A program made the translations under genes and the position numbers. DNA of 64,000 nucleotides from Ophelia neglecta (lineage: Eukaryota), in the NCBI GenBank assembly GCA_965285935.1, contig OZ260661.1:20584001-20648000 (forward strand), given 5' to 3'. This document shows, in pieces, positions 1 through 50,800 of the stretch. The first letter of the stretch is position 1. Each line of letters starts with the position of its first letter. Under the pieces are notes generated by a model. It ran no database searches, was not told the origin of the DNA, and saw only the letters and a list, made by a program, of their open reading frames with translations.

Positions 1-861
1 ATTATCATTGTCGTTATCTTTGGTAGTGAACTTCATGCCGTTGGCGTACTTCATGGAATCCGAAGCAGTGGTAGAGGCGGTATTGTAGCCAGACACGCTC
101 AGCTTATATTTTGTATCTTCCCCAGCCACACTAAAGTGGGAATACTCGGCATACTTCTTATCCCCATTCCAGGCTGTTAGATCTACACGGAGCTTATAGC
201 CCCCTTTTCCGGTAAGTTGATGGAGTTTCTCTAAACCCAGCCAGAAATTTCCCCTGGGATCTCCAAATCCATTCCGGTAGTCGGTCCACCCTTTGTTGAA
301 GTCCACGCTGGAGTCCTGACGGTGAAGAAAGACGACGTCGGTGACGGGTATCAGTGTGAGTGTGGTGGCTTTAAACCCACGATAGTCGTTATAGGCGCTG
401 AACCACTTTATTCCACCATTGTTCGGCCCTGTTCCATAAAAACCTGTTAAATGTGCAAAGAAGCAGTTAGTGTACCACCAGCCAGCCTCCCAGGTACGGG
501 CACAGTTCCCACTCCACTGGTCGTTGTCCTTGTCGGGGGTGGAGAACTTGGCGCCGTTATGTTGTGTCAAACTATCTCCAGCTGTGGAGGAGGAGTCATA
601 CCCAGAAACAGAAATCTTATACATCTCGGTCTCACTGGCGACAGAAAACGTCGAGTAAAGGGCCCACTTCTTCTGTCCCGACCAATCAGTTAGATCCACT
701 CGGAGTTTGTAACGACCTTTGCTTGTCAATTCGTGTAGTTTCTCAAGACCAATCCATAAATCTCCATGAGGGTCACCAAAACCGACCTTATAGTCGACCC
801 ATTTTCGGTTGAAAGTTTGTCTCCCATCCTGGCGCCGCAGAGCGATAGTATTTGATGACGC
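1..861 (-). CDS. Tandem fibrinogen-related domain (2xFReD) protein, copy 1, main coding exon (3' end outside window)
   Basis: Acceptor tatttccag|GCG at 862/861. Hand translation is open for 287 codons: ASSNTIALRRQDGRQTFNRKWVDYKVGFGDPHGDLWIGLEKLH...DKDNDQWSGNCARTWEAGWWYTNC...GFGDPRGNFWLGLEKLH...FTTKDNDNDN. Colinear without net indel with 46760-47620. Probably absent from the ORF track because no stop lies inside the window. Confidence 0.9.
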
Positions 862-1727: not shown

Positions 1728-1889
1728 CTGCTTTCCTTGTAAATTTCGAATCTGCCCTCTAGATGTTTTGAGCAAGGAACCAGGTATGTTGTCGCTCAGT
1801 CCTGCTCGCTCATTTCTCTGCTCTTCGCAAGAAGTCTTACAGATCCATATTATCAATATGGCAATTTTCATGAAAGCCGACAGTGTCAT
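1728..1889 (-). CDS. Copy 1 first coding exon (signal peptide plus short linker, 54 aa)
   Basis: MTLSAFMKIAILIIWICKTSCEEQ...RNLQGKQ ends in consensus donor CAG|GTAAGT at 1728/1727. Phase 0 matches the phase-0 acceptor at 861. A pyrimidine-rich acceptor lies just upstream of the ATG. Confidence 0.75.
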
Positions 1890-23967: not shown

Positions 23968-25010
23968 CTAAGCAGGCTGTACTGTGAGAGTCACAGCTTT
24001 TAATGCAGCGTGGTTATTATAAGCCCCATACCAAAACATGCCGTGTACGGATGTATATCCGTCGGGTTTGTACAGACCTGTAGGGTGGACCCAAGAGTCA
24101 CCATCATACCACCAACCTCCTGTAATTTCTTTGGCTATGTTTTCAGAGTGATCATCATTGTCGCGGTCTCGGGTGGAGAACATAGCGCCGTTAGCGTTCT
24201 TAAAGGAATCCGAAGTAGAGGTAGAGGCAGTTTTGTAGCCAAACACGGTCAGCCGTTATTTCAAATCTTCACCAGCCACACTAAAGTGGGAGTACTCGGC
24301 ATACTTCTTTTCCCCATTCCAGGCTGTTAGGTCTACACGGAGCTTAAAGCCCCCTTTGCCGGTGATTCGATGAAGTTTCTCTTACCCCAGCCAAAAGTTT
24401 GCCTTGGGATCTCCAAATCAATTCCGGTAGTCGGTCCACCCTTTGTTGAAGTCCATGCTGGAGTCCTGACGGTGAAAGAAGACGAATTCCGTGACGGGTA
24501 TCAGTGTGAGTGTGGTGGCTTTAAATCCACGATAGTCATTATAGGCGCTGTACCACTTTATTCCACCATCGTTCGGCCCTGTTCCATAAAGACCTGTTAA
24601 TTGTGCAAAGAAGCAGTTAGTGTACCACCAGCCAGCCTCCCAGGTACGGGCACAGTTCCCACTCCACTGGTCGTTGTCCTTGTCGGGGTGGATAACTTGG
24701 CGCCGTTATGGTGTGTCAAACTATCTCCAGCTGTGGAGTAGGAGTCATACCCGGAAACAGAAATCTTATACATCTCGGTCTCACTGGCGACAGAAAACGT
24801 CGAGTAAAGGGCCCACTTCTTCTCTCCCGACCAATCAGTTAGATCCACTCGGAGTTTGTACCGACCTTTGCTTGTCAATTCGTGTAGTTTCTCAAGACCA
24901 ATCCATAAATCTCCCTGAGGGTCACCAAAACCGACCTTATAGTCGACCCATTTTCGGTTGAATACTTGGGTCACATCCTGGCGCCTCAGAACGATAGTAT
25001 TTGATGACGC
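23968..25010 (-). pseudogene. Tandem FReD gene copy 2, pseudogene
   Basis: 1043 nt vs 1044 in copy 3. One-base deletion in the G-run at about 24685. In-frame stops at 24418-24420 (TGA), 24382-24384 (TAA) and 24256-24258 (TAA). Signal-peptide exon removed by a deletion joined at about 25157. Confidence 0.92.
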
Positions 25011-28819: not shown

Positions 28820-31380
28820 TGACCATATAAAACCTTCATTCCCTAACTCACTAGCAAATATTAACCATAAGAAACAGCATTCGTATGAAAAAGATAATTT
28901 CTATTCAAAGTTAAAAGATAAAATATAAAACAAATGTGCAAACTTTTATTGTCTGTTGAAATGTTGAACTGTTTTAAATATCGCTCGTCAAAAATGGTGC
29001 AAGTATTAAGCAAATGACACCTACCACTGATTTGCCTTCAATAATGAGTACAGCTAGGTTCTTGACTACGTCCTCTCTAAACTGAAGTTGTCCAGCAGTG
29101 TGCCTTCTAGGTCTGAAGAGGGTTACTATGTAGCTGCAATATCACATGAAATTCAATGAAAGATAAATTTGATTAAAGTAATGATAGCCTAAATCAAATG
29201 TCATGAAGCAGACAGAACCAGGCACCAACCGATTTGAATCAAGATGAATTACCGATGCCTGGTATTACTGGCAGTGATGCTAACATGATTATTAGGGGCA
29301 AACACATGTCGTTGTCACATCGGCCGCGATTGGATCAACGCAGTCAGACTGACGGTTCAAATGTTGGCTTCCAATTGAGGATGGGCATTGAAAGGATATC
29401 TGCCTAAACCGGTCTGTTCATATGATGAAACTATCAAAATAAATACATATATTAATATTAATATATGAATCGGGTTTGGAGAGCGTTTACATTGTATGAA
29501 AGGATACACAGCTGGCTATAGTTTGGTCTCCCGGTAAGGTTAGGGTTTATATTCCTGAATGCCACCGTAATACAAAAGCAAAAGTTTTTAACCATGTCTC
29601 TCGAAAAGATATATAACTAAATGAAAGATATAAAAGGAGCACGAAAATTTGACTATATTCCTTTGATATAATGAGCCCTCCAGGTCTCTATCCGCATCGC
29701 CCAGGGACGCGTCAATTCAGGTCTCTATACTGATCACCAAGGGGCGCGTCCATCAGGTCTCTATCAGCATCGCTAAGCGACGCGTCAATGGGGCCTTTAT
29801 CATGATCGCTAAGCGACGCGTCCATCAAGCCTCTATACTGATCACCGAGGGACACGTCCATGGAGCCTCTATCATGATCGCTAAGCGACGCGTCAATTGG
29901 GCCTCTTTCATGGTCATCGAAAGGCGTGTCCATCATGTCTCTATCAGCATCGCTAAGCGACGGGTCAAATAGGGCCTCTCTCCTGATAACCGAGGGGATC
30001 GTCCATGGGGCCTCTATCCTGATCACTAAGTGAAGCGTCAATCGGGCCTCTATCATTATCACCGAGGGGCGTATCCATCAGGTCTCTAGCAGCATCGCTA
30101 TGCGACGCGTCAATCGTGCGGGTCTTGGACAGGCTGGGGATGAATGAATTATGAACTCTAAGTCCAACATGTCTATATACTTGGGTATCAGAACTTCGGT
30201 TTAAATACTTCATTCAACTTTATATCTTCGAAACTTAAAATGTCAGTTTCTACTTTTGATTATTTGTGTCTCGGAATGTACCACTAGGTTCCCACAACTC
30301 GAGTGTACAACGAATATGCTTCGGCCATAATAATATAAATGGCTCTTGCTCTTTGACATTAAACATTCAGATCCGTTTTTGATACCTTCACGAATGTTGT
30401 GCATGTATCCAATCAATCATATGTGCAGTGTTGAATCGTCAGTAAATGATATTAAATGAAAAGCAACTGGCTTTGGCAGTACTCTATATTTTAGTTGGTA
30501 CAATATTCCAGGTATATCCCGACAAACAGATCGATAATATGAATGGACATGACCTTCATCTAGATATGCTCCAATGCGAAATTATAAAAGATTGAAATCG
30601 CACTCTACACTAGGAGTGTATAAATCAATAAATTAATGGGAATAATCCAGTTTAAATTTGCTGATCACGTTTAGTGACAACTGTCATGGCGGGTAATTTT
30701 TGGCTGGTGTATTTAGTAAACAAGGCTTAACGTAATGCAGTGGAAATGATTGCGGGCATGCCATATTAAACATACCTTCATACACATGTGAAGTAAAGTT
30801 CAGGCCATCTCGACAAGACAACTTGCGCTACATCAATTCAGTGAAATATAAAGCCCCTACGAACCTAGTAGCTCGTCAGCATTATTTTTCAGACTTCTTT
30901 CTGACGCCTTATTTAACATGTTTAAGCAATGACGAATTGCATCCGGTTTCAAACAGCGTCCTGCTGCAAAAGATGAGCTTTTGTTGACAATATAAGTAAT
31001 TGTAGTTAAACCTGTACCAACTGAGAGATTATGCACAATGTAAAACCCGGCATTCCTTATTCAAACAGTAGGGGCAGCTTGTCTACCATGACATTGTAAT
31101 TCAAACATGGAGAACAGAACTCATTCGACCCATCCTATGTAACAGGGATATGTATGCCTGATCATGGGCACTGGACCATGGTCACAGCACCGCTATTAGA
31201 TTGGCCAGAGGGATCCGCCCCTTAAATATACTTTGCATACCTTTATCCCAGTTCTCGAAATTAATCGATAGACCTGACAGCTGAGAAAAATAATCTATAG
31301 TTGGGGATGTGAATTTAAGAGAGTCTACAGAGCCTTCTTGATATACGCTAGTGTTGTCTGCATATTGAGAGAGCTTTCTG
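28820..31380. repeat. Additional, more diverged orphan copy of the FReD upstream block
   Basis: Matches about 2720-3520 then about 4770-6170. Includes a short 36-bp array at 29680-30125. No coding exon. Confidence 0.85.
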
Positions 31381-36384: not shown

Positions 36385-38830
36385 TATCGTGGACACCCAC
36401 TACATTCTAACAGAGACTTACCCTACTGGGGACACCAACTACACACTAACTGAGAGACTAACCCTACTGGGGACACCCACTACATTCTAACAGAGAGACT
36501 AACCCTACTGGGGACACCAACTACACTCTAACTGAGAGACTAACCCTACTGGGGACACCCACTACATTCTAACAAGGAGACTAACCCTACTGGGGACACC
36601 CACTACATTCTAACAGAGAGACTAACCCTACTGGCGACACCCACTACATTCTAACAGAGAGACTAACCCACCTGGGGACACCAACTACACACTAACAGAG
36701 AGACTAACCCTACTGGGGACACCCACTACATTCTAACAAGGAGACTAACCCTACTGGGGACACCCACTACATTCTAACAAGGAGACTAACCCTACTGGGG
36801 ACACCCACTACATTCTAACAGAGAGACTAACCCTACTGGGGACACCCACTACATTCTAACAGAGAGACTAACCCTACTGGGGACACCAACTACACTCTAA
36901 CTGAGAGACTAACCCTACTGGGGACACCCACTACATTCTAACAGAGAGACTAACCCTACTGGGGACACCCACTACATTCTAACAGAGAGACTAACCCTAC
37001 TGGGGACACCCACTACATTCTAACAGAGAGACTAACCCTACTGGGGACACCCACTACATTCTAACAGAGAGACTAACCCTACTGGGGACACCCACTACAC
37101 TCTAACTGAGAGACTAACCTTACTGGGGACACCCACTACATTCTAACAGAGAGACTAACCCTACTGGGGACACCCACTACATTCTAACAGAGAGACTAAC
37201 CCTACTGGGGACACCCACTACATTCTAACAGAGAGACTAACCCTACTGGGGACACCAACTACATTCTAACAAGGAGACTAACCCTACTGGGGACACCCAC
37301 TACATTCTAACAGAGAGACTAACCCTACTGGTGACACCCACTACATTCTAACAAGGAGACTAACCCTACTGGGGACACCCACTACATTCTAACAGAGAGA
37401 CTAACCCTACTGGGGACACCCACTACATTCTAACAGAGAGACTAACCCTACTGGGGACACCCACTACATTCTAACAGAGAGACTAACCCTACTGGGGACA
37501 CCCACTACATTCTAACAGAGAGACTAACCCTACTGGGGACACCCACTACATTCTAACAAGGAGACTAACCCTACTGGGGACACCCACTACATTCTAACAG
37601 AGAGACTAACCCTACTGGGGACACCAACTACACACTAACAGAGAGACTCACCCTACTGGGGACACCCACTACATTCTAACAGAGAGACTAACCCTACTGG
37701 GGACACCCACTACATTCTAACAGAGAGACTAACCCTACTGGTGACACCCACTACATTCTAACAGAGAGACTAACCCTACTGGGGACACCCACTACATTCT
37801 AACAGAGAGACTAACCCTACTGGGGACACCCACTACATTCTAACAAGGAGACTAACCCTACTGGGGACACCCACTACATTCTAACAAGGAGACTAACCCT
37901 ACTGGGGACACCCACTACATTCTAACAGAGAGACTAACCCTACTGGGGACACCAACTACACACTAACAGAGAGACTAACCCTACTGGTGACACCCACTAC
38001 ATTCTAACAAGGAGACTAACCCTACTGGGGACACCCACTACATTCTAACAGAGAGACTAACCCTACTGGGGACACCCACTACATTCTAACAAGGAGACTA
38101 ACCCTACTGGGGACACCCACTACATTCTAACAGAGAGACTAACCCTACTGGGGACACCCACTACATTCTAACAGAGAGACTAACCCTACTGGGGACACCC
38201 ACTACATTCTAACAGAGAGACTAACCCTACTGGGGACACCCACTACATTCTAACAAGGAGACTAACCCTACTGGGGACACCCACTACATTCTAACAGAGA
38301 GACTAACCCTACTGGGGACACCCACTACATTCTAACAGAGAGACTAACCCTACTGGGGACACCCACTACATTCTAACAAGGAGACTAACCCTACTGGGGA
38401 CACCCACTACATTCTAACAGAGAGACTAACCCTACTGGGGACACCCACTACATTCTAACAAGGAGACTAACCCTACTGGGGACACCCACTACATTCTAAC
38501 AAGGAGACTAACCCTACTGGGGACACCAACTACATTCTAACAGAGAGACTAACCCTACTGGGGACACCCACTACATTCTAACAAGGAGACTAACCCTACT
38601 GGGGACACCCACTACATTCTAACAAGGAGACTAACCCTACTGGGGACACCAACTACACTCTAAAAGAGAGACTGGCCCAACCATGGACACCTAAAACACG
38701 CTTACAGAGAGACTTGTCCAACCATGGACACCTCAAACACTCTTACAGAGATACTTGTCCAACCATGGACGCCTGAAACACTCTTACAGAGAAACTTGTC
38801 CAACCATGGACACCTAAAACACTCTTACAG
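36385..38830. repeat. 41-bp minisatellite, inverted and expanded copy (about 55 core units)
   Basis: Unit CATTCTAACA(GA/AG)GAGACTAACCCTACTGGGGACACCCACTA. Confidence 0.97.
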
Positions 38831-38884
38831 AGATACTTGCTCTACCGGAGACATCCATTTACGAGAGACTGTCCTTCACCGGGT

Positions 38885-39545
38885 CGGGGACTGCCGAAAT
38901 TCCGACCGACCATTGGTCCGACGAGCCATTGGTCTTAAGGCCTATTGGTCCGACGGCCCATTGGTCCGAAGAGCCATTGGGCCGAATTTCCGACGGCCCA
39001 TTGGTCCGACGGCCTATTGGTCCGACGGCCCATTGGTCCTACGAGCCATTGGTCCGACGGCCCAGTGGTCCGACGACCCATTGGTCCGACGGCCCATTAG
39101 TCCGACGACCCATTGGTCCGACGGCCCATTGGTCCGACGACCCATTAGTCCGACGGCCTATTGGTCCGACGACCCATTGGACCGACGGCCTATTGGTCCG
39201 ACGACCCATTGGACCGACGGCCTATTGGCCCCGTCTTATTGGTGATGTTTAGTCTCGGCAGTTCGGACCTGTGAGGTACAGTTGCAGGAAATATAGTTTC
39301 TCGATACTTAACTAAATTCTATTTACAAAACATGACACACAGTTTCTCCAATTAATCCGAAAATGTACATTTTTTTTTGACTAAACATCACCCAGGTGGT
39401 AAGACAATTAACAATAAAAAAGACGTGAAATAGGACGAATAGGCCGTCGGACCAATGGGTCGTCGGACTAACGGGCCGTCGGACTAATGGGTCGTCGGAC
39501 TAATGGGTCGTCGGACCAATGGGCCTTGGGACCAATGGATCCTAC
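38885..39545. mobile_element. Foldback/MITE-like 16-bp array element, inverted duplicate of 8125-8735
   Basis: Same arms and spacer in reverse complement, with slightly different unit number. Confidence 0.65.
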
Positions 39546-39865
39546 TGCTTATGCTGTGGAGTTGCAGTCTCAAATGGAAGATGGTAGGAGGCAAATTTCA
39601 ACTATTGAACGAGAAATAGGGCAGAATTGCATAGCATTAGAGAGATCAATGCAGATAAATGTCAGAAGTATTACAGCCACTACAAGATAGAACCACATCC
39701 AGTAACAACCATGCCAGAGGTATCTTCGTCTTCGTATTTATCGCCCCTTTTGACATGGCAGTCGCCTTCACTTGGTGTAGACAATTCAGGGCATAATCAG
39801 CTTTCATTTCCAACTATGGCTCATTCCACCTTACCAAGTCAGGCAAATGGGTATACACAGTCGCC

Positions 39866-41110
39866 GCCGAAGCGCTGTGAAAATAGACGGAAAATTATCC
39901 AAATGGTTACTGTCCAACAAGTCCTTCACCAAGGAGGGAAGCTGTCACTGATGCTTTTTGTATTCTTCTACAATGAACTGTTTGAGAGGCTGACAACCTG
40001 TGCAGGAAACAGAATATTCCCAGAAAGTCCCTGCTTATTACATGGCATTGATGTCACAAGCCCTGGGTATGCGGACGACATTCCCTTAATGTCGGTAACC
40101 ATACAACCAAATGCAGAAACTTTGCAATATTGCTCTGGAATTCAGCCGGAAGTGGTGACTGGATATCAATGCATCTAAATGTGACATATTGAGATTCGGT
40201 AATGCCAACGAAGAAAGGAGCACTAAGATAATGATCGCGAAAGAATTAATCACTGAGACATCATCTGCAACGCACCTCGGCGTCACTTTGACTTCGACCT
40301 CACAGCACATGACGGTGGCCATTAAGGATCGGGCAACTAAAGCAAGGAGACTAGTGAACGCCCTGGGCGTTGGTATATCGTTTGGTAAAATCAACACCAA
40401 GACACTCGGTCAGCTCTACTGGACAGTCGTAGTACCGGGATTCTTATATGGACTTGAACTCCTGAATCTGAATAGGCAGCAGATGGAGATAGCAGAGTCG
40501 GTACATCAGGAAATAGCCAGTAGATTCCAAGGACTTGGGACTCAGACCCCCAACCCTGCAACGTTAGTCACCAACGGCTGGGGATCAATCAGGCAGTATC
40601 TAGACCATAAATGCTTCAACTTATGAGGAACATTCTTGAGCTTCCGAGTACAAATATCTACAAGAGAATGATCAAAGGCGTTACCTCTATAACTGAAGTC
40701 TCTGGAGAGTATAGCGGCGATAGTCCAGTAGGGGTCCTGCTGGATACCTTCAAAAAATACAACCTGTAGCGCACACTCTTCTCATGGGTTCAAAGCGGAG
40801 AAGTCCCGCCAAAACTGCAATGGAGAAAACACTCACGGTAAGTTACATGGAAGTAAAAGGAGCAGAAATGGGCCATCGAATGTACGACTCAGTTTCTGGT
40901 AAGGGAAATGGCAGTGATTTTCCGAGAATTAGTTGATTCAGATACAAAACGTCCCTGTGCTAGAATTTTGAATAGCGCTTCATACTCGCCATATGTAAGA
41001 CATAGTATTCCGCAATGTATTAATACCAAATACAGTAAAAGGAATCCTGGACAGCAGTAAATATACGCCCTCTCGAACCCTGGTGCGACAATAACATGTT
41101 TATACTCGAT
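39866..41110 (+). mobile_element. 5'-truncated LINE fragment, inverted duplicate of 6330-7797 with a further internal deletion
   Basis: QGGKLSLMLF, YADDI, YWTVVVPGFLYGLELL. Deletion junction at about 40889. Confidence 0.85.
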
Positions 41111-42944
41111 TAATACTATTTGATTATATTGTTCATTTCATTTCGAATGTATAACCCCTTTTGCCAAGTGTGCTTTAGTTTATGTTCACTTACCTGATTT
41201 CTTTTTGTTCCCTATTACATTTCCCATCTTGTAAGCTCTTCAGAAAGTCGAGGTAAATAAAAAAAAAGCGCTCTACAGAAAGCTCTCTCACTATGTAGAC
41301 GACACCTATATCAAGAAGGCTCTTTAGACTCTCTAAAAGGCACAACCTCAACTTGACATTATTTTTATCAGCTGTCAGGTCTGTCAATTAATTGTGAGCA
41401 ATTGGATAAAGGTATTCATAGTATATATTCCTAATACCTATGTGCATTTATGAACTAGGGCAGTAAGATAGGATTCTTAATGTGATTTGTCTGCATGGCG
41501 TCCACTCTTTTCTTAAAGCTTTTAAACATCTGGCTTTCCACGCATCCACTCTACCGATTGAGCTAAGGGGCGGATCCCTCTGGCCAATCTAGTAGGGGCG
41601 CTGTGACCATGCTCCAGGGCCCATGATCAGTCACACATATCCCTGTGACATAGGTTGGGTCGAATGAGTTCTGTTCTCGATGTTTAAATCACAACGATGT
41701 GATGGTAGGCAAGCTGCCCCTCCTGTTTGAAAAAGGAAAACTGGTTTTTACATTGTACATAATAGCTCAGTTGGCACAGGTTAAACTACAATTACTTATA
41801 TTGACAACAAAAACTCATATTTGGCAGCAGGATGCTGTTTGGGGGCGGATGAATTCGTCTTTGCTTAAACTTGTAAAATAAGGCGTCAGAGAGAAGCCTG
41901 AAAATAATGCTGACGAGCTACTAGGTTCGTAGGGGCTTTATATTTCAGTGAATTGATGAGGCGAAATTTTCTTGTCGGGATGGCCTGAACTTTACTTCAC
42001 AAGTGTATGAATAGTATGTTGAATATTACATTCCCGCTTATCATTACCACTGCAATACGTTCAGCCTTGTTTACCATATACACCAGCCAAAAATTACCCG
42101 CCATAGCAGATGTCACTAAACGAGATCAGCAAATTTAAACTGAATTATTCACGTTTACTTATTGATTTGTAATTCACGCCTAGTGTAGAGTTCGATTTCA
42201 AACTTTTATAATTTCGCAATGTATGATATTTTGATGAAGGGTATTTCCATGCATATTATCGATCTGTTTGTCGGACTATATACTGGAATATTCTATCAAC
42301 TAAAATATAGAATTCTGTCGAAGCAAGTTGCTTTTTCATTTGATATCATTTGCAGACGATCGAACGATTGATCGATTCTACAGCCCACATATGAGTAATT
42401 GGATACATGCACAACATTCGTGATGGTATCAACAACGGATCTGAATATTTAATGTCAAAGAGAAAGAGCCTTTTATATTATTATTGTCGAAGCATTTTCG
42501 TTGCACACTCGAGTCGTGGGAACCTATTGGTACTTTCCGAGACACAAATAATCAAAAGTAGAAACTGACATTTTATGTTTCGAAGATATAAAGTTGAGTG
42601 AAGTATTTAAAACGAAGTTATGATTACCAATTGTATAGACATGTTGGCCTTAGAATTCATAATTCATTCATCCCCAACCTGCTCAAGAGTGTGGCGGGTG
42701 GGTTTGGTGGGTCGGGGGAGGATGGAGGAAGGGGGAGGGTGCTTCGGTCTAGGCTGTGTCGATCCTTCCAGCTCCATTTCTCCGTGCATCTCTTTTAACC
42801 GCATTTTGTCCATTGTATTTAACAAATACCTTTTCATATTTGGCTTTCAGATGTGGTGTGAACCTTTTATGGTTGCTCCGATGGTATATATTTTTTTAAG
42901 TAAATCCGAAAAACAATTTGTCTGTCCTGTGATGCAGCCCTAGA

Positions 42945-43700
42945 CCCGCACGATTGACGCGTAGCGATGCCGATAAAGACCTGATGGACACTACCCTCGG
43001 TGATCATGAAAGAGGCCCAATTGACGCGTCGCTCAGCGATCATGATAGAGGCCTCATGAACGTGCGCCTCGGTGATCATGATAAATGCCCGATTGACGCG
43101 TCGCCCCATCGACGCGTCCCTTGGTGATCAGTTTAGAGGCCCGATGGAACCGAACTATTGACGCGTCGCTCAGCGATCATGATAGAGGCCTCATAAACGT
43201 GTGCCTCGGTGATCATGATAGAGGCCCAATTGACGCGTCGTTCAGCGATCATGATAGAGGCCTTATGAACGTGCCCCTCGGTGATCATGATAGAGGCTCG
43301 ATTGACGCGTCGCTCAGCGATCATGAAAGAGGCCTCATGGACGTGCCCCTCGGTGATCACGATAGATGCCCGATTTGACGCGTCTCTTAGGTATGCTGAT
43401 AGAGACCTGATGGTCACGCCCCTCGGTGATCAGGATAGAGGCCCGATGAACGTGCTCCTCGGTGATCATGATAAAGGCCCGTTGAGCGTGCCCCTCGGTG
43501 ATCATGATAGAGGCCCGATTGACGCATTGCTCAGCGATCACGATAGAAGGCCCATAGACGTGCCCCTCGGTGATCAGAATAGAGGCCCGATTTGACGATG
43601 CTGATAGAGACCTGATGGACACGCCCCTCGATTATCTTGATAGAGGCCCGATTGACGCGTCGCTCAGCGATCATGATAGAGGTCAGACGGACGCGTCCTT
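42945..43700. repeat. 36-bp CpG-rich tandem repeat, inverted array
   Basis: Reverse-complement units GATCATGATAGAGGCCCGAT... Confidence 0.9.
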
Positions 43701-44627
43701 AAGCGACTAGCTCATCAAACTACGACCCATCAGGGAGCCTTTTTGTGAGTGGAGCTACAGCCACATAGGGCCCATCAGAAGACTGGGAGGTCGGTATTTT
43801 ACAGAGTTGTGTTGTCCTCACTTGCAGACATGTACTAGCATATAGATATGGCGGGAATCTAGCCGCCTTCTTTCTTCAGACGTCGCCATGAAAGACAGAC
43901 GTGCATCAAACACACAGACTATAGATTACAGCCTTGTAACATTAAGCCCAGGAAGGTCATTTTATTTTTGTGGGTTATGCAGCGCAGGGTCAACCATAAG
44001 CACCAATACATTTCCAAAGTGTGGCTATCAGTATATCGATGGAATTTTCGGGTCCACAATGAAATTGTAATTGCACATGCACCTGGCAGGCCAGCAAGGA
44101 GCTCATTTTATATTTTTAATTAAGTAATATATCTTGTCGAGAGACATGGTTAAACACTTTTGCTTTTGTATTTGCGCGGCATTCAGGAATATAAACCCTT
44201 ACCATACCGCGGGCCAGACCATAGCCAGCTGTGTTTCCCTTCATACAATTTAGACGCTCTCCAAACCAGAGTCATATATTGATATTAATATATGTATTTA
44301 TTTTGATAGTATCATCATATGAACAGACCGGACTGATCTCGAAGCCAGCATTTGAACCGTCAGTCTGACTGCGTTGTTTATATCGCAGCCGATATGACAA
44401 CGCCATGTGTTTGCCACTTATAATCGTGTTTGCATCATTGCAAGTAATATCAGGCAACGGCAATTCATCATGATTCAAATCAGTTTGTGTCTGGTCATGT
44501 CTGCTCCATAACATTTAAATTCAGCTATCATACCTTTAATCAAATATCTCTTTCATTGAGTGTCAGGTGTTATTTCAGCTATATAGTGACTCTCTTTAGC
44601 CTCAGGATACACACTCTTAACAACTTC

Positions 44628-44692
44628 AGTTAAGAGAGGACGAAGTCTAGAATCGTGCTGTGCTCATTATTGAAGGCAATTCGACATCAGAG
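44628..44692 (+). promoter_or_regulatory. Candidate transcription start / non-coding first exon of FReD copy 3
   Basis: TCAGTT at 44626-44631 and donor AG|GTAGGT at 44692/44693. The acceptor ttttatag at 45724 before the ATG implies an upstream exon exists. Confidence 0.3.
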
Positions 44693-45735
44693 GTAGGTGT
44701 CATTTGCTTTATACTTGCACCCTTTTTGACGAGCGATATTTAAAACAGTTCGACAGTGAAACTGACAAGAAAGGGTCGCACATTTGTTATATATTTCATC
44801 TTTTAACTTTTAATTGTCCATTTCATACGAATGCTGTTTCTTATGGTTGGTATTTTCTTCTGAGTTAGGGAATGAAGATTTAATATGGTAATCATCATTT
44901 GTCTCAGGCCGGAAATATATAAAGCATTGCCGCTTTTAAAAAACCATTGCTATGTACTTATATTCGGTCGTTGTTTTAGGTTAAATTTCTCATTTGAATT
45001 AAAACGAATTTTAATTGATATTAACTCCTTAATGCCCAGTGTCTTTTGTTTCGTTGTCCGAAATTGTCCCATGACAATTGGTATATCCATGTGCCCCCTT
45101 TGCTTTCTACTTAATAATCATAAAAAAACTGACAATATTTAAGTTCAACATTTTGGAAAACTGGGTTGACGTATATCTAAAATGGTATTTTACTGAATGC
45201 ATCAAAACATACTTCTGCCAAGATTGTTATATAACATACTCATTTTCACATAAATTATTGTATGTCTCTGTTAGCCCCGGGAATATATAATCATTTTTGG
45301 AAAGTTGGCCCTGGTCAAAGCCAGCTGCTACTCTTCTTGGTCAATTCAACAGTTATTAAACAGTTGATAAGCTCGCTAATTATATTCACCCGTGATGATG
45401 GTATCACATGACCAGGACATTCAATGTTCTGTGAGTCAAAAGCTAATATAGGCATTTAAGCATATTTCTTCCTAAGTTACCTACCTGCCTGCTTACTTAT
45501 TTACATTTTCATACATTCCCAATTACTTGCTTACTTACTTACTTATTTACTCCCTTTTTTGCTTACTTACAAACTTGCTGACTTAATTTCTATCAAATTC
45601 TTCCCTTTCTTTTACAGCCAATTGAAATATGACACCTACCTGATTCCTAGCTTGCTTACTTACTTACCTATTAACTGTCTTAATTGCTTACTTACATACT
45701 TGCTAACTTTATGTTCTTTTATAGCCAACTGAAAT

Positions 45736-45897
45736 ATGACACTCTTGGCTTTCATGAAAATTGCCATATTTACAATATGGATCTGTAAAACTTCTTGCGA
45801 AGAGCAGAGAAATGAGCGAGCAGGACTGAACGACAACCTACATGATTCCTTGCTGAAAACATCTGGGGGGCGAATTCGAAATTTACAAGGAAAGCAG
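45736..45897 (+). CDS. Copy 3 first coding exon (signal peptide plus linker, 54 aa)
   Basis: MTLLAFMKIAIFTIWICKTSCEEQ...RNLQGKQ with donor CAG|GTAAAT at 45897/45898, phase 0. Frame conserved with copy 1. Confidence 0.75.
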
Positions 45898-46759
45898 GTA
45901 AATATAATCTGCGTAATTGTTCTGGCCATCGTCGTCTTTCTTCAGTTTTAAAATGGTAACAACGATGCCATCATTTGCCATATCTTAAACCCGGTTTGCT
46001 ATCACATGGTGCTACGTAGGGTACAGCAATTATGTTTTGGCTGTCAAAATACTAGCTTTGTTAATTTTTTTTGGTCAAATTTCTTGATGTTGATGGTATA
46101 CCATTCCTTTACGGCATTTTATACATAAAAGATCTACTGGCCATAAAATATGACACTTACAGGGTGACACGACCATATTGTTCTTCTGGTATATATACAT
46201 ATGCGCGCTAAAGCAGCTACATCTAGTATTTCCCCCCATTATATTCCGGTCTTTGTTAGATGTGTCAATAATGTCTTGGATAATATACTCTTTCAGTTCC
46301 TCTGTGTTTATTAATGAAATACCACTTTAATGTAGGAACGTGGGTATGCATTTGAGGAAATTTGGTCTTTCAAAAAAATTGTTTATTCTGGGCCTGTTTC
46401 TGTATCTTGTATTGCTCTAAAATGTGTCAATAAACACTATTTTAGCAATCGAAAGTCAAAAGTGCGACTCGATTTGAAGCAAGTTCTTTATTAAGCGAAA
46501 GCCAGAAGTCTTACATCAATACAATGTCACACACTTGAATCTATATCAGCTGTTTGGTTAATTCGAGTATCCATCAGTATATATTTTCGATGTTTTCTAA
46601 ATATAAACTAAACGACACAAATTGCTGGAGAAGCGATTTATCCCACTGTTCATAATATAATAACATTTTAATTGGGCTGACTAGTTGTTGGTTTATGGAT
46701 TCACCTAACGTCAGTGGAGTCGGGGTTTATGAATTTTTTCTAATTCTAATTATTTCCAG

Positions 46760-47803
46760 GCGTCATCCAATACTATCGCTCTGCGACGCCAGGATGGAAG
46801 AGAAACATTCAACCGAAAATGGGTCGACTATAAGGTCGGTTTTGGTGACCCACAGGGAGATATATGGATTGGTCTCGAGAAACTACACGAATTGACAAGC
46901 AAAGGTCGGTACAAACTCCGAGTGGATCTAACTGATTGGTCGGGAGAGAAGAAGTGGGCCCTTTACTCGACGTTTTCTGTCGCAAGTGAGACCGAGATGT
47001 ATAAGGTCTCTGTTTCTGGGTATGACTCCTCCTCCACAGCTGGAGATAGTTTGACACAACATAACGGCGCCAAGTTCTCCACCCCCGACAAGGACAACGA
47101 CCAGTGGAGTGGGAACTGTGCCCGTACCTGGGAGGCTGGCTGGTGGTACACTAACTGCTTCTTTGCACATTTAACAGGTTTTTATGGAACAGGGCCGAAC
47201 AATGGTGGAATAAAGTGGTACAGCGCCTATAACGACTATCGTGGGTTTAAAGCCACCACACTCACACTGATACCCGTCACCGACGTCGTCTTCCTTCACC
47301 GTCAGGACTCCAGCGTGGACTTCAACAAAGGGTGGACCGACTACCGGAATGGATTTGGAGATCCCAAGGGAAATTTCTGGCTGGGGTTAGAGAAACTCCA
47401 TCAACTTACCGGAAAAGGGGGCTATAAGCTCCGTGTAGATCTTACAGCCTTTAATGGGGACAAGAAGTATGCCGAGTACTCCCACTTTAGTGTGGCTGGT
47501 GAAGATACAAAATATAAGCTGAGCGTGTCTGGCTACAATACTGCCTCTACCACTACTTCAGATTCAATGAAGGACGCCAACGGCATGAAGTTCACCACCA
47601 AAGATAACGACAATGATAATTACATATTTAACATTGCCATCGGACAAACAGGAGGTTGGTGGTATAAAACTACGCCCCGGGCCCACCCTACAGGTGTGTA
47701 CCAACCCGACGGATATAGCAAGCTGGACTGCATGTATTGGTATGGGGCTTATGATAACAGCGGTTCATTAAAGGCTGTGACTCTTACAGTACAGCCTGCT
47801 TAG
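46760..47803 (+). CDS. Tandem fibrinogen-related domain (2xFReD; ficolin/FREP/tachylectin-5-like) protein, copy 3, intact main exon
   Basis: Acceptor ttccag|GCG, then 347 codons plus TAG, in frame with ORF 46892-47803. Two sets of FBG motifs: RxDxxxxFxxxWxDYxxGFGD, WxGLEKLH, LRVDL, FST/FTTxDxDND, GWWY. Confidence 0.95.
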   Translation, partial: ASSNTIALRRQDGRETFNRKWVDYKVGFGDPQGDIWIGLEKLHELTSKGRYKLRVDLTDWSGEKKWALYSTFSVASETEMYKVSVSGYDSSSTAGDSLTQHNGAKFSTPDKDNDQWSGNCARTWEAGWWYTNCFFAHLTGFYGTGPNNGGIKWYSAYNDYRGFKATTLTLIPVTDVVFLHRQDSSVDFNKGWTDYRNGFGDPKGNFWLGLEKLHQLTGKGGYKLRVDLTAFNGDKKYAEYSHFSVAGEDTKYKLSVSGYNTASTTTSDSMKDANGMKFTTKDNDNDNYIFNIAIGQTGGWWYKTTPRAHPTGVYQPDGYSKLDCMYWYGAYDNSGSLKAVTLTVQPA

Positions 47804-47839
47804 AATCCAGCAGCACTCGTTTTATAACCTGATTGCTGT

Positions 47840-47861
47840 AATAAATTTCAGGATGAAATAA
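47840..47861 (+). terminator. Candidate polyadenylation signals for copy 3
   Basis: AATAAA at 47840 and about 47857, within 60 nt after the stop. Further AATAAA at about 48167 and 48279. Confidence 0.3.
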
Positions 47862-50800
47862 AAGTGACGCTGAAGCCTAAAAACGCTTGTTGCATATTTT
47901 GTCTTTTTTCCATTTTAACTAAAACTTGCTCCTATTGCTCTGTATAACTATAAAAATCAATCCATTAGCTTTCGCAATATAATTATCAACTTCCTCATTA
48001 TCATTAAAGATATATATTGTCAAACGTGAACCTTAAAGATGGATATTTTTGCCGGAAAACCGTGTAACATTGATAAACGTGTTTCTAAAACATCACTATT
48101 CTCTAGGTCAAAGCTTTTGTTCAACTCGTTCACCATAGGAAATAGAATTGGATGCCTTTTCTATTAAATAAAATCTACCCTTAACCTCTTAATAAAAAGG
48201 TTTTGACTCTGAAAGGCTGCTTACACACAGAGTCGGATAAAATCTTGCCTCCGGATTATTTCTGCACTTCCCTCATTGAAATAAAGTTGAATTTCCACCT
48301 AACCAGTTTTTTTTATTTATCATTTAAGACGCAAAAAATGGTCATGTTCGTGTTGATTGTGCCTTAAAATGAGGAAGGGGGAAGGTTAACAGCCAAGGAT
48401 TGTCTTTCTGTAAAAGGGAAGTAAGTGTCCCAAGTAGGGTCATTCTCATTGAGAATGTACCTACTACGAGTAGGGGTCCCTGGTTGGGGTAGCCTCTCGG
48501 TTAGAGTGTCGTGGTTTGGTTGATTATTTGATAGTGACCTGATGTCGGGACTTGTGATTCGATAGGGTTTGTAAGTCCATGGTAACACAAGCTGAAACAC
48601 ATTTAATAATACCGTCCGGGTACAATCGAAGGCCAATCAAGGCTTGGAAAAGGGAAAGGACGGTCTATGCAATCTAACAATGAGATCAAATGTCTTAACT
48701 TGTTCCAGCCCACCTGTGTGAGTAATGCGAGTAGTGAATGGACATGTGCATGACAAAATATAAGATGAAAAATTAAACAAATAAAACCACAAATATCTGT
48801 TTTCTATTTAATACATTACTTGACAATATTCCATGTGACAATCGACCTATTTCGAATTACATTTCTCTTAAAATATCATTCCTTTCTTCAAATTATTCAT
48901 CTACTTTTGTCTAATAGATTATATACATAATAGCCACTGGGTGTTTTTCTATCTCCATACACTGATTGTGGATTTTTGCCGCTTAGCCTCCGCTAAGCCT
49001 GCGCCTACCCGCCGCAACCGAATCCCTTTGTAGACATTTGGTGTCATTCCACCCAGACATGTAAAATACCTACGCGGCAGCCTAGCCTCCACATCTCCGA
49101 ATTGATTAATAGCCTATTTTCTTAAGCCATCTATTGTTTGCTATGGAACAGGCTTCTGCGGAAAATTATTTCAGAATCACCGGTCATCAATTTTGGCTTG
49201 TCTGGTCTCGGAATTAAACATAGCAAATAGAACCTCATTACTATTACTCTTTTACAACCAGAAATTGCTGAATCTGACGTGGACGGAATGCAAATTGCAG
49301 TAGTAGTGTAATGACCATAATGGCCTGTCGAAATGTATCAATTCATAACCGAAGTAGTATCCCAAATATTATAAATTATTGAAACTATAATCTGATCGTA
49401 AAAAAAAACATGGCATTTATTTATTTAAGTCCAAGTTCGAAATACACATCTTTAATAACAACCATGAACCACCAAGAATAGAGTAATTTATGACAAAGTA
49501 ATACCATGAATTATCTTGTCATGATTCCGGTTCCGTTATTGAACGATCCATTAAGTGGCCATGCATTATTGAAAAAGGCTTTCAGCATGTCCTTTCAATA
49601 ACTTTTGGTTACAATAGTACTGGTATTGTCGTAACAATGATATTTAATAAAAATCAAATATATAAGGGAATGATTTTCTTTGACATTGCCCTAGCAATTC
49701 CATTTAATGATCAAACTAAACAATTGCTAAGATGCATATAGTCCTGAGCTTCAAGCAAAATTGTAAGCAAATACCGCTAGGAGAAGACCAGAAATTAATA
49801 GACAGAGTCTGGCGGAGTAAGCAATTACCGATCTATTCTGTGCTCACACGGGTAACCACTGAGAGTGGGTGTCCGGCTGACCGAGCGAAAATCATAAATT
49901 AAGAAGAGTCTATTTACATCACCAGGAACCACATGCTGCAAGCTAGCAACTATCATCTCCCTGTTGCCTAACTGAAAATATGGTTGTAACTAAGTTACAC
50001 TTTTAAGCAAAATTGCTATTCACGCTCTTAAACAATTGTTCGAACTTAATTCATGTCTAGGGGACCCATAAGTTTGTTATCCACCTATATTAGGTCAAGC
50101 TTGACATGTAGTTTCAACACTCATTCCATCATATCAAGTTGAATTACTTTCCAACATGAACTTATGGATGTACCAACCACACCTAATGGTTTCCCTCAGT
50201 GGCGGGTAATGGGAGTAAGACCTGGTTCGAGGAGATGTAGACATTCAATAATGTTTATACTCGCAACATGACACTTGCCAACACCTATCTGGTAAAATTT
50301 AGTTGCGACAAACATTTTAGCGCTTTATTTTCCTTTTGGGATTAATATGGAAACTAATATTGACATTTAAATGAAGATCTCTTGTGGTGGTTGGCGTAGC
50401 AATCATTATATAATGATTTGTCAGCCCATTTTTTGGCTTATTAATCCCCAAGAACGAGGCAATTTGATGATTAAGTTTAATTTACAGGCTCACTTGGTAT
50501 TTCTTCTGGTCATTATCTCACTGGTAGTACGGAGTAAGCAGTCTTTCGGTGGATATATGAACAGTTAATGTACCCCTTGGAGCCAATAATCCAGAAACTT
50601 GTAAAAAGGAATGCTATATATATTAATAGCCAGGGCGGCTTTTAGACGGACTCATCGATTAGGATGATGACTGTATGAGTGGCAGGGTGGAAAATCTGGA
50701 TAGACCATTAACGATCTGGGACTGCTCAATAGAAAAGTGGGCAATTATAATTAAATATTGTTTGAAAAACGGATCTTCTATTTCATTGAGATGGCATTTT

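What the first reader, a model, noticed from the sequence alone, without database searches (positions are those of the whole stretch)
47560..47803. Domain 2 lacks the conserved P-subdomain disulfide and varies strongly in the ligand loops
Seen: domain 1 has NCARTWEAGWWYTNC and is almost unchanged in all three copies. Domain 2 reads DNDNYIFNIAIGQTGGWWYKTTPRAHPTG...SKLDCMYW...DNSGSL in copy 3 but DNDDHSENIAKEITGGWWYDGDSWVHPTG...TSVHGMFW...NNHAAL in copy 2. Framework residues are kept, loops are replaced, and both Cys are absent from both copies. Established: these loops form the Ca2+/acetyl-binding site of ficolins and tachylectin-5A. Inference: a constant domain plus a variable specificity domain, as in diversifying immune or allorecognition receptors.
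Basis: partly seen in the sequence, partly recalled or inferred. Interest (0 to 1): 0.75.

Follow-up and report, generated by a model that had tools for sequence, protein, structure and literature searches.

The report
Disulfide-free variable fibrinogen lectin domain
A small cluster of secreted two-domain fibrinogen-type lectin-like genes keeps its first domain constant, while the second domain has lost a near-universal disulfide and differs between gene copies exactly in the ligand-pocket loops; half the copies are already dead genes.

Summary
Copy 3 (46760-47803, +) encodes two fibrinogen-related domains (FReDs), both without the A-subdomain. Domain 1 keeps the P-subdomain Cys pair and is near-identical in all copies. 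Domain 2 lacks both Cys and differs in three or four loops.

- Copy 2 is a pseudogene: a 1-nt deletion, three in-frame stops, and the exon-1 region deleted.
- The assembly holds only six Cys-less domain-2 copies. Two sit in apparently intact genes (copies 1 and 3).
- Contigs from the sequenced sample carry a copy-3 variant that turns the first Trp of GGWWY into a stop.
- The pattern is partly historical. Domain 1 is homogenised (0-6% divergence in all pairs), and loop cassettes have moved between paralogs by gene conversion.

The proposed refutation fails. In pocket-proximal codons omega is 1.5-1.95, against 0.41-0.53 elsewhere in domain 2. A site model that also lets the local rate rise gives omega about 3.5 for a quarter of P-part codons (p=0.006). 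The flagged sites map onto FIBCD1 pocket residues, including one ex-Cys position above 0.9 and the other above 0.7.

I found no RNA evidence, and no evidence for allorecognition. My reading is a lineage-specific variant of a known theme, paralog diversification of FReD lectins; interest is moderate.

The parts
45736..45897 (+). Candidate exon 1 of copy 3. It encodes 54 aa with a signal-peptide-like start (MTLLAFMKIAIF...), followed by a GT donor.
   Evidence: The ORF and the GT donor are conserved in copies 3, 1 and 0. The region is deleted in copy 2. No RNA support was found, and the signal peptide is inferred by eye.
45898..46759 (+). Inferred intron of copy 3 (GT...CAG).
   Evidence: The acceptor TTTCCAG|GCG is conserved in copies 1, 2 and 3. 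The donor is shown. The splice is not shown by reads (DNA contigs only, no joints).
46760..47275 (+). Domain 1 of copy 3: a FReD with B and P subdomains and no A-subdomain. It has the Ca-site Asp and the Cys pair (NCARTWEAGWWYTNC).
   Evidence: Pfam PF00147 profile positions 44-220. Divergence between all copy pairs is 0-6%. Copy 1 vs copy 3 gives dN 0.015, dS 0.084.
47276..47803 (+). Domain 2 of copy 3 plus the stop codon: a second A-less FReD without the P-subdomain disulfide.
   Evidence: AF2 model of domain 2 alone: pLDDT 93.4, pTM 0.90. Foldseek gives TM 0.91-0.94 and rmsd 1.2-1.6 to ficolin, FIBCD1 and ANGPTL2 FReDs.
47618..47650 (+). Loop V1 (NYIFNIAIGQT), equivalent to FIBCD1 396-406. 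It includes the ex-Cys401 position (Ile, 47633-47635) and the Tyr405 position (Gln).
   Evidence: Gapless motif alignment to FIBCD1 through P0101 and residue numbers from PMC3908420. The six copies read NYIFNIAIGQT, NYGLNMAIGLT, DHSENIAKEIT (twice), NYIYNNPNELT and LSKSNRALRNT.
47666..47689 (+). Loop V2 (KTTPRAHP), equivalent to FIBCD1 412-419. It includes the Asn413 and ex-Cys414 positions (Thr-Thr; ex-Cys at 47672-47674) and the His415 position (Pro).
   Evidence: Four sites here have NEB above 0.9 for the omega>1 class.
47714..47731 (+). Loop V3 (YSKLDC), equivalent to about FIBCD1 429-434 (the Tyr431-Ala432 region). Placement of a one-residue gap is uncertain.
   Evidence: S, K and L are flagged with NEB above 0.9. 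It contains the unpaired Cys unique to copy 3.
47750..47764 (+). Loop V4 (YDNSG), near the FIBCD1 Trp443 position.
   Evidence: One site is flagged.
47657..47659 (+). Trp codon (first W of GGWWY, exon residue 300). A G>A variant at 47659 in the sample's contigs gives TGA.
   Evidence: read laying: a 170-nt contig (47597-47766) in runs X2 and X3 has this single difference, while X1 contigs carry G. That segment differs from every other assembled copy by 29-49 of 170 bases.
1..861 (-). Copy 1, last exon. It runs on to 179 bases before the window start. It is an intact 347-aa frame, 91% identical to copy 3.
   Evidence: L002:1501-2541:-.
1728..1889 (-). Candidate exon 1 of copy 1 (coordinates approximate, taken from the alignment offset).
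   Evidence: open 54-codon frame with a GT donor.
23968..25010 (-). Copy 2, a pseudogene. It has a 1-nt deletion in the C-run at 24685-24688 and in-frame stops at 24418-24420, 24382-24384 and 24256-24258. It also lacks about 1.16 kb upstream (copy 3 positions 45455-46613), which holds exon 1.

Best explanation
This is a young, lineage-specific birth-and-death cluster of secreted lectin-like genes. Each gene appears to have two exons: a signal-peptide exon and one exon encoding two fibrinogen-related domains that both lack the A-subdomain.

Domain 1 keeps the canonical P-subdomain (Ca-binding Asp pair plus disulfide). Purifying selection and gene conversion hold it nearly identical between copies.

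Domain 2 lost both P-subdomain cysteines once, in the ancestor of this cluster. It still folds as a FReD and keeps the Ca-binding Asp pair. The three or four loops around the canonical ligand pocket, including both former Cys positions, have been replaced between paralogs at or above the neutral rate. Whole loop cassettes have moved between copies by gene conversion.

The likeliest function is a bivalent, Ca-dependent glycan-binding protein. The constant domain would supply a fixed interaction, and domain 2 would supply a paralog-specific one.

Shown: the anatomy, the fold prediction, the loss of Cys, the mosaic history and the rate pattern. Inferred: secretion, ligand binding, Ca dependence, and that the loop changes alter specificity.
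For: Two FReD stretches on one exon.

Domain 2 structure:
- Model pLDDT 93.4; TM 0.91-0.94 to ficolin and FIBCD1.
- The Cys-less domain-2 copies form one clade with 100/100 support on a long stem.
- Exactly six copies exist in the assembly at 60% identity or more; the next hit is at most 49%.

Signs of constraint on domain 2:
- Ca-binding Asp (FIBCD1 D393 and D395 equivalents) kept in 6 of 6 copies, with no indels in the loops.
- The framework is constrained. B-part omega is 0.14 for copy 1 vs copy 3. The rest of domain 2 has omega 0.41-0.53, significantly below 1.

Loops:
- The 30 pocket-proximal codons have omega 1.95, 1.69 or 1.53 depending on the codon-frequency model. Their tree length is 4.8, against 0.83 for the rest.
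- M1a vs M2a on the 70-codon P-part gives 2dlnL 50.7-53.7.
- A dual-rate control, in which the fast class may also have a higher synonymous rate, still prefers omega 3.5 over 1 (2dlnL 7.52, p 0.006). On the 30 codons it gives 6.17, p 0.013.
- The domain-2 B-part, used as a negative control, shows nothing (p 0.82 and 0.29).
- My M0 fit reproduces IQ-TREE exactly: lnL -871.032, omega 1.178.
- Sites with NEB above 0.9 fall on FIBCD1 E398, N399, N413, C414, t416, l419, s430, Y431, A432 and q444. C401 and Y405 are above 0.7.

History and sister cluster:
- Copies 0 and 1 differ by 1-10% in the 3' flank but by 28% in the loops. Copies 0 and 2 differ by 6-10% in the loops but by 18-26% in the flank.
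- The sister C5 cluster, which keeps the disulfide, shows the same constant domain 1 and variable domain-2 loops. The variability therefore does not simply follow from losing the Cys pair.
Against: - No RNA run was found, and the reads laid were DNA contigs, so transcription and splicing are unproven.
- Only 2 of 6 copies look intact. Copy 2 has four lesions plus a deletion, copy 0 has a stop, and two copies are fragments.
- Copy 3 itself has a TGG>TGA variant in domain 2 in the sample.
- Pairwise loop omega is only 0.87-1.38.
- The a-priori partition test is marginal or not significant: 2dlnL 4.02, 2.47 and 1.17.
- The C5 replicate is not significant once local rate is allowed (p 0.31).
- dS is also raised in the loops: 0.24-0.26 against 0.08 in domain 1.
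- Recombination is demonstrated. It is known to inflate site-model tests (recalled, not read here).
- Four of the six sequences are pseudogenes or fragments.
- The site and dual-rate models are my own code, validated against IQ-TREE only at M0.
- The acetyl-pocket residues (FIBCD1 Y405, H415, Y431) are not kept in domain 2, and Y405 and H415 are not kept in domain 1 either. The ligand class is therefore unknown.
Confidence: 0.5

Rival explanations
1. Degenerate second domain. After the disulfide and the pocket residues were lost, domain 2 no longer binds a ligand. It survives only as a folded spacer or stabiliser. The loops drift neutrally, and the apparent omega above 1 is an artefact of gene-conversion patches and multi-nucleotide changes.
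For: - In solved FReDs the disulfide ties the Ca site to the acetyl site and sets the cis-peptide that binds the ligand (PMC3908420 passages). It is kept even in ANGPTL3 and ANGPTL4, where a Cys change is listed among loss-of-function mutations (PMC5928061 passages).
- The pocket aromatic residues are absent.
- Pairwise loop omega is about 1, and the partition LRT is weak.
- Pseudogenes and a nonsense variant are present.
Against: - The Ca-binding Asp pair and the loop lengths are kept in 6 of 6 copies.
- ML omega point estimates are all above 1, and the dual-rate test rejects omega=1 for the fast class (p 0.006).
- The same loops vary in the C5 cluster, which keeps the disulfide.
- Domain 1 also lacks the acetyl-pocket residues yet is strongly conserved. 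Their absence therefore does not mark a dead site in this family.
Confidence: 0.3
2. History alone. Gene conversion homogenised the 5' part (intron, domain 1, start of domain 2). The 3' end simply escaped and is older. No difference in selection is needed.
For: - Divergence steps up near 47500-47650 and stays raised in the non-coding 3' flank. For copy 1 vs copy 3 it is 0.04-0.08 in the intron, 0-0.07 in domain 1, 0.21 in the loops and 0.10-0.19 in the flank.
- dS rises 5' to 3' in both clusters.
- The genealogies are mosaic.
Against: - Age raises dN and dS together, but omega differs about fourfold between the pocket codons (1.5-1.95) and the rest of domain 2 (0.41-0.53).
- Conserved framework residues are interleaved with the replaced loops within 210 bases.
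- For copies 0 and 1 the loops are an island of 28% divergence between flanks of 3-5% and 1-10%.
Confidence: 0.15
3. Allorecognition-type or somatically diversified receptor. Under this reading the variable domain would be highly polymorphic between alleles or diversified in somatic cells.
For: Only the constant-plus-variable layout and the gene-conversion mosaic.
Against: - The predicted product ends ...TLTVQPA with no membrane anchor.
- In the one contig assignable to copy 3's loops, the sample's alternative sequence differs at 1 of 170 bases, and that base makes a stop.
- All the variation seen is between germline paralogs.
- Only two intact genes exist.
Confidence: 0.03

Closest known systems
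FReD pattern-recognition lectins: ficolins, tachylectin-5A, FIBCD1
   Same: - The same B+P fold: Foldseek TM 0.91-0.94, rmsd 1.2-1.6.
- The same Ca-binding Asp pair.
- The variable loops are the ones that form the S1 acetyl pocket.
   Different: - There is no A-subdomain, and two domains sit in tandem on one exon.
- Domain 2 has no Cys401-Cys414 type disulfide, so it lacks the usual anchor for the cis-peptide.
- The pocket residues Tyr405, His415 and Tyr431 are not kept.
- No collagen-like stalk or transmembrane part was seen in the two exons.
Mosquito multi-FBG FREP/FBN proteins
   Same: - Tandem, mostly incomplete FBG domains are reported in Anopheles gambiae (PMC1242226 passages).
- One Anopheles melas protein (P0002) has a second domain lacking both P-subdomain Cys.
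- The family is expanded and immune-related.
   Different: - Identity is only 38%, and the tandem arrangement arose independently.
- No constant/variable split between the two domains is reported in the passages I read.
Nearest database relative P0001 (unnamed, 559 aa, three A-less FReD units)
   Same: Units begin at the same point (VVFLHRQD...) directly after the previous unit. It is 50% identical over 86% of the query.
   Different: All three of its units keep the Cys pair.
Expanded invertebrate FREP families (snail FREPs, oyster and mussel FReD genes)
   Same: They show lineage-specific expansion, gene conversion and high diversity of FReD genes. I saw only search listings and abstracts: PMC12074976 and PMC4346834.
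   Different: - In snail FREPs the diversified part is the IgSF region (recalled, not read here).
- Here there is no IgSF domain and the cluster is tiny, with two intact genes.
Sister paralogs in the same genome (contig C5, five copies; contig C1 at 134.67 Mb)
   Same: They have the same two-domain exon, with domain 1 near-identical between copies and the domain-2 loops replaced.
   Different: They keep the disulfide. In the C5 copies domain 2 is cut short after PTG-Y. The evidence for omega above 1 there is not significant once local rate is allowed.

Membership tests
Fibrinogen-related domain (Pfam PF00147 Fibrinogen_C) | Significant match to the family profile | tested here: met
   E 8.5e-92 and 307 bits against a cut-off of 22, with two stretches.
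Fibrinogen-related domain (Pfam PF00147 Fibrinogen_C) | Complete A+B+P architecture | tested here: not met
   The best stretch, in domain 1, starts at profile position 44 of 221. Domain 2 aligns to residues 47-216 of a 221-residue solved FReD. No A-subdomain-like exon was found in 104 kb using 70 A-subdomain queries.
Fibrinogen-related domain (Pfam PF00147 Fibrinogen_C) | B+P fold | tested here: met
   Predicted only: pLDDT 93.4; TM 0.91-0.94 to solved FReDs.
Fibrinogen-related domain (Pfam PF00147 Fibrinogen_C) | P-subdomain disulfide (TL5A Cys206-Cys219; FIBCD1 Cys401-Cys414) | tested here: not met
   Domain 2 has I/T, M/H, I/E, I/D, N/K and R/Y at the two positions in the six copies. Domain 1 keeps the pair.
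Ca-dependent acetyl-binding FReD lectins (ficolin / TL5A / FIBCD1 type) | Ca-binding Asp pair (FIBCD1 D393 and D395) | tested here: met
   D-x-D-N-D is kept in both domains and in 6 of 6 domain-2 copies. This is by alignment only; no metal binding was shown.
Ca-dependent acetyl-binding FReD lectins (ficolin / TL5A / FIBCD1 type) | Aromatic acetyl pocket (FIBCD1 Tyr405, His415, Tyr431, Trp443, with Ala432) | tested here: not met
   In domain 2, Tyr405 becomes Q/L/I/I/L/N and His415 becomes P/P/S/S/P/P. The Tyr431-Ala432 region is variable. In domain 1, Tyr405 becomes Trp and His415 becomes Phe.
Ficolins | N-terminal collagen-like stalk | tested here: not met
   The candidate exon 1 peptide (54 aa) has no Gly-X-Y run. 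Other upstream exons cannot be excluded without RNA data.
Snail-type FREPs | IgSF domain(s) upstream of the FReD | tested here: inconclusive
   Pfam found only Fibrinogen_C in exon 2. Exon 1 is too short for an IgSF domain. The full gene model is unverified.
Diversifying immune-type recognition families | omega above 1 concentrated in ligand-contact sites | tested here: inconclusive
   Point estimates are 1.5-1.95. The dual-rate site test gives p 0.006. However, there are only six sequences, recombination is shown, and the C5 replicate is not significant.
Allorecognition receptors | Membrane anchoring and extreme allelic polymorphism | tested here: not met
   No hydrophobic tail was seen. There is 1 difference in 170 bases between the sample's two copy-3 loop sequences. 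This comes from a single sample and contigs only.

The most novel reading that the evidence does not exclude
A cnidarian-like animal has a germline 'constant plus variable' lectin. Shedding the near-universal P-subdomain disulfide freed the two Cys positions and the surrounding pocket loops to become a positively selected, cassette-exchanged binding surface. This would be a FReD analogue of a paratope, diversified between paralogs by gene conversion.
Probability: 0.3. Interest if true: 0.6.

Novelty: new variant of a known kind. Interest (0 to 1): 0.42.

Why it matters
FReD lectins are major innate recognition molecules of invertebrates. The P-subdomain disulfide is treated as a fixed part of their binding site. 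If a disulfide-free FReD is shown to fold and bind, the pocket tolerates far more remodelling than the solved structures suggest. It would also give a compact natural system for asking how specificity is rewritten: two intact paralogs, four fossil cassettes and a sister cluster that keeps the disulfide. If domain 2 proves inert, the cluster is simply an ordinary example of birth-and-death decay in an expanded lectin family.

Tried and rejected
- Expression. The run search found three runs of one sample, none on record as RNA. Laid on 42300-48200, they behave as DNA contigs: even cover of introns and no joints. Transcription and splicing stay unchecked.
- A-subdomain exon. tblastn with 70 A-subdomain segments against 104 kb around the cluster found nothing credible. 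Reading the three frames of 43650-45480 and 45300-46800 showed only the 54-aa exon-1 candidate.
- Structure mapping. One gap near the Tyr431 equivalent is ambiguous. The full 347-aa model was mediocre (pLDDT 77.7; loops 144-160 and 306-330 below 50) and was not used for interdomain claims.
- Close relatives elsewhere. A scan of 1.84 billion representatives gave nothing above about 51% identity, so no orthologous Cys-less domain was found. The word-based search gave a best hit of 50%.
- Standard M1a/M2a. It is very significant. I do not rely on it, because it confounds high local rate with omega above 1. C5 domain 1 and the C5 B-part also reach p 0.03 under it.
- Literature. Six searches turned up no description of a FReD lacking the P-subdomain disulfide with variable loops, and none of A-less tandem FReDs in cnidarians. 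That holds only for the open library searched; supplements were closed and not consulted.
- A words look-up in earlier findings gave nothing relevant.
- Row selection. For alignment A2 I used 88 sequences picked by eye, mostly single-domain hits, out of about 130 available. For A1 I used 13 two- or three-domain sequences.
- Regex limits. The Cys counts use a regular expression on the WW[YF] core and miss cores without that motif.
Full report
WHAT IS THERE

The window is G000:C1:20584001-20648000 of a 762-Mb assembly. The best database matches of the protein are cnidarian (octocoral, stony coral) and mosquito FReD proteins, at no more than 50% identity. I did not determine the organism.

On the + strand, 46760-47803 is one open frame of 347 codons plus a stop, preceded by a conserved CAG acceptor. 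Pfam finds Fibrinogen_C with two stretches (E 8.5e-92). The best stretch starts at profile position 44 of 221.

- Domain 1 is exon residues 1-172. Domain 2 is residues 173-347 and follows without a linker.
- Both domains begin where the B-subdomain begins, so both lack the A-subdomain.
- No A-subdomain-like exon exists in 104 kb around the cluster.
- A 54-codon ORF at 45736-45897 starts with a signal-peptide-like sequence and ends at a GT donor. It is conserved as an ORF in copies 3, 1 and 0.
The splice is inferred.

THE COPIES

tblastn and the whole-genome search give five copies on this chromosome and one on contig C12.

| Copy | Position | State |
|---|---|---|
| 3 | 46760-47803, + | Open |
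| 1 | 861 to 179 bases before the window start, - | Open; 91% identical to copy 3 |
| 2 | 25010-23968, - | Pseudogene: 1-nt deletion in a C-run (24685-24688), three in-frame stops (24418-20, 24382-84, 24256-58), and 1.16 kb upstream missing, which holds exon 1 |
| 0 | About 10.5 kb before the window | One stop in domain 1 and a one-codon insertion |
| L012 | Further upstream on C1 | 3' fragment |
| L010 | Contig C12 | Degenerate copy |

A search with the domain-2 P-part alone finds exactly these six at 60-100% identity. Nothing else exceeds 49%.

THE OBSERVATION

It is confirmed.

- Domain 1 carries NCARTWEAGWWYTNC in copies 0, 1, 2 and 3. In copy 2 it lies downstream of the frameshift.
- Domain 2 has no Cys at either P-subdomain position in 6 of 6 copies.
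- This is unusual. 29 of the 35 distinct FReD cores seen in L001-L030 keep both Cys, and the other 6 are these copies.
- 110 of 118 cores in 120 homologues keep both, and one lacks both: an Anopheles melas second domain.
- 177 of 187 cores in 149 library representatives keep both, and three lack both.
- The Cys-less domains form one clade (100/100) on a long stem, so there was one loss event.

WHERE THE VARIATION SITS

FIBCD1 numbering was transferred by a gapless motif alignment through P0101. It agrees with every residue number quoted in PMC3908420 (passages). In that paper:

- Ca is bound by Asp393, Asp395 and two carbonyls.
- Cys401-Cys414 links the Ca site to the acetyl site.
- The Asn413-Cys414 cis-peptide presents the NH groups that bind the acetyl oxygen.
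- Tyr405, His415, Tyr431, Trp443 and Ala432 form the pocket.

In domain 2:

- The Asp pair is kept in all six copies.
- Cys401 is I/M/I/I/N/R and Cys414 is T/H/E/D/K/Y.
- Tyr405 is Q/L/I/I/L/N and His415 is P/P/S/S/P/P.
- The variable blocks are V1 (FIBCD1 396-406), V2 (412-419), V3 (about 429-434) and V4 (about 441-445).

Domain 1 keeps the Cys pair but has Trp at 405 and Phe at 415. Neither domain is therefore a canonical acetyl binder.

Domain 2 alone is predicted with pLDDT 93.4 and pTM 0.90. It superposes on ficolins, FIBCD1, ANGPTL2 and tenascin FReDs at TM 0.91-0.94. PMC5928061 (passages) notes that subdomain P is the ligand site and the most variable part of FReDs. It also notes that even ANGPTL3 and ANGPTL4 keep this disulfide.

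Nei-Gojobori estimates for the two open copies, 1 vs 3:

| Region | dS | dN | omega |
|---|---|---|---|
| Domain 1 | 0.084 | 0.015 | 0.18 |
| Domain 2, B-part | 0.145 | 0.021 | 0.14 |
| Domain 2, P-part | 0.241 | 0.210 | 0.87 |
| Loops, residues 283-331 | 0.255 | 0.270 | 1.06 |

Loop dN/dS is therefore not well below 1, and the stated refutation fails. However, dS is also 2-3 times higher in the loops.

ML partitions (IQ-TREE GY, fixed topology):

- The 30 pocket-proximal codons give omega 1.95 (F1X4, 2dlnL 4.02 against omega=1), 1.69 (F3X4, 2.47) or 1.53 (F, 1.17).
- The rest of domain 2 gives 0.41-0.53, significantly below 1.

My own site-model code matches IQ-TREE at M0 (lnL -871.032, omega 1.178). 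Its results:

- M1a vs M2a on the 70-codon P-part gives 2dlnL 50.7-53.7.
- That test confounds fast sites with selected sites, so I added a dual-rate control in which the fast class may have a higher overall rate. It still prefers omega 3.5 over 1 for 24% of codons (2dlnL 7.52, p 0.006). On the 30 codons it gives p 0.013.
- The domain-2 B-part shows nothing (p 0.82 and 0.29).
- The sister C5 cluster gives M1a/M2a p 4e-5, but the dual-rate test gives p 0.31.
- Sites with posterior above 0.9 fall on the equivalents of E398, N399, N413, C414, t416, l419, s430, Y431, A432 and q444. C401 and Y405 are above 0.7.

HISTORY

Sliding divergence for copy 1 vs copy 3:

| Region | Divergence |
|---|---|
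| Upstream intron | 0.04-0.08 |
| Domain 1 | 0-0.07 |
| Loops | 0.21 |
| 3' flank | 0.10-0.19 |

Across four copies:

- Domain 1 differs by 0-6% in every pair.
- The loops of copies 0 and 2 differ by 6-10%, while their flanks differ by 18-26%.
- Copies 0 and 1 differ by 1-10% in the flank but by 28% in the loops.

The genealogies of loop cassette and flank therefore conflict. Gene conversion or recombination has homogenised the 5' part and moved loop cassettes. This agrees with note s1-747477. Part of the 'constant versus variable' contrast is thus a product of history, not only of selection.

EVIDENCE OF DECAY

- Only two of six copies are open.
- The three runs holding this DNA are one sample. 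Their contigs show 47659 G>A in runs X2 and X3 but not in X1.
- That change turns TGG, the first Trp of GGWWY in domain 2, into TGA.
- The contig carrying it (170 nt, one difference from copy 3) differs from all other assembled copies by 29-49 of 170 bases. It is therefore a copy-3 allele or an unassembled twin.
- The other exon differences match paralog states in domain 1, seen by comparison. I read them as cross-laid paralog contigs.

READING

The anatomy, the Cys loss, the fold prediction, the mosaic history and the rate contrast are shown. Secretion, Ca and glycan binding, and different specificities are inferred.

| Reading | Weight |
|---|---|
| Paralog-specific, adaptively remodelled domain-2 pocket | 0.50 |
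| Inert, drifting domain 2 | 0.30 |
| History alone | 0.15 |
| Allorecognition or somatic diversification | 0.03 |

The last has little support. There is no membrane anchor, the sample's two loop sequences are nearly identical, and all the variation lies between germline paralogs.

COMPARISON

Tandem, partly incomplete FBG domains are described for Anopheles FREPs (PMC1242226 passages). Expansion and diversification of invertebrate FREPs are well known; I saw only listings and abstracts for this. Three features distinguish this case:

- Both domains lack the A-subdomain.
- The P-subdomain disulfide was lost cleanly in one domain only.
- The former Cys positions are among the fastest-changing pocket sites.

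I found no description of this in six literature searches. Supplements were closed.

VERDICT

This is a new variant of a known kind, of moderate interest. Its value depends on showing that the two open genes are expressed and that domain 2 binds something.

Noticed in passing
window 46760-47275 and 45736-45897: Domain 1 also lacks the A-subdomain. With the 54-aa exon-1 candidate, the whole predicted protein would be a signal peptide, a short linker and two A-less FReDs. The nearest database relative, P0001, is a chain of three such units.
   Followed up: partly
L013-L017 (G000:C5:26520581-26524000): A single open frame of 1247 aa holds at least five tandem FReD units, with cores spaced about 252 residues apart. 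All of them keep the Cys pair.
   Followed up: no
L005-L009 (G000:C5, 16.8-18.0 Mb): Five two-domain paralogs have a domain 2 that stops shortly after PTG-Y, so the C-terminal third of the P-subdomain is missing. Domain 1 is near-identical between them and the domain-2 loops are replaced.
   Followed up: partly
window 36391-38673 and 8905-9752: A 41-nt satellite, with 55.7 and 20.7 copies at 93-94% matches. The two arrays lie in opposite orientation, inside a 2.9-kb segment duplicated at 38000-40889 and 9619-6790.
   Followed up: no
window 4029-4644, 11052-12057, 26970-27576, 29798-30113, 42994-43682: A 72/145-nt minisatellite recurs about 3 kb upstream of each FReD copy. It produces long spurious ORFs with repeated ...ITEGRV... 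peptides in the ORF list.
   Followed up: no
window 14325-16136 (-), 39627-40626 (+), 6685-7056 (-): ORFs that look by eye like reverse-transcriptase fragments of a non-LTR retrotransposon, present in several copies between the FReD genes. They were not scanned against any family library.
   Followed up: no
window 44341-45454 versus 26269-25154: The upstream non-coding segment of copies 3 and 2 is 94.3% identical. That is more than their exons (85.9% over 46614-48024), and it sits next to the 1.16-kb segment missing in copy 2.
   Followed up: no
window 47672-47677 and the equivalents in copies 1, L012 and L010: Four of six domain-2 copies have Pro at the position of FIBCD1 His415, directly after the ex-Cys414 position. 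An X-Pro bond might take over the role of the canonical cis-peptide, but this is pure speculation.
   Followed up: no
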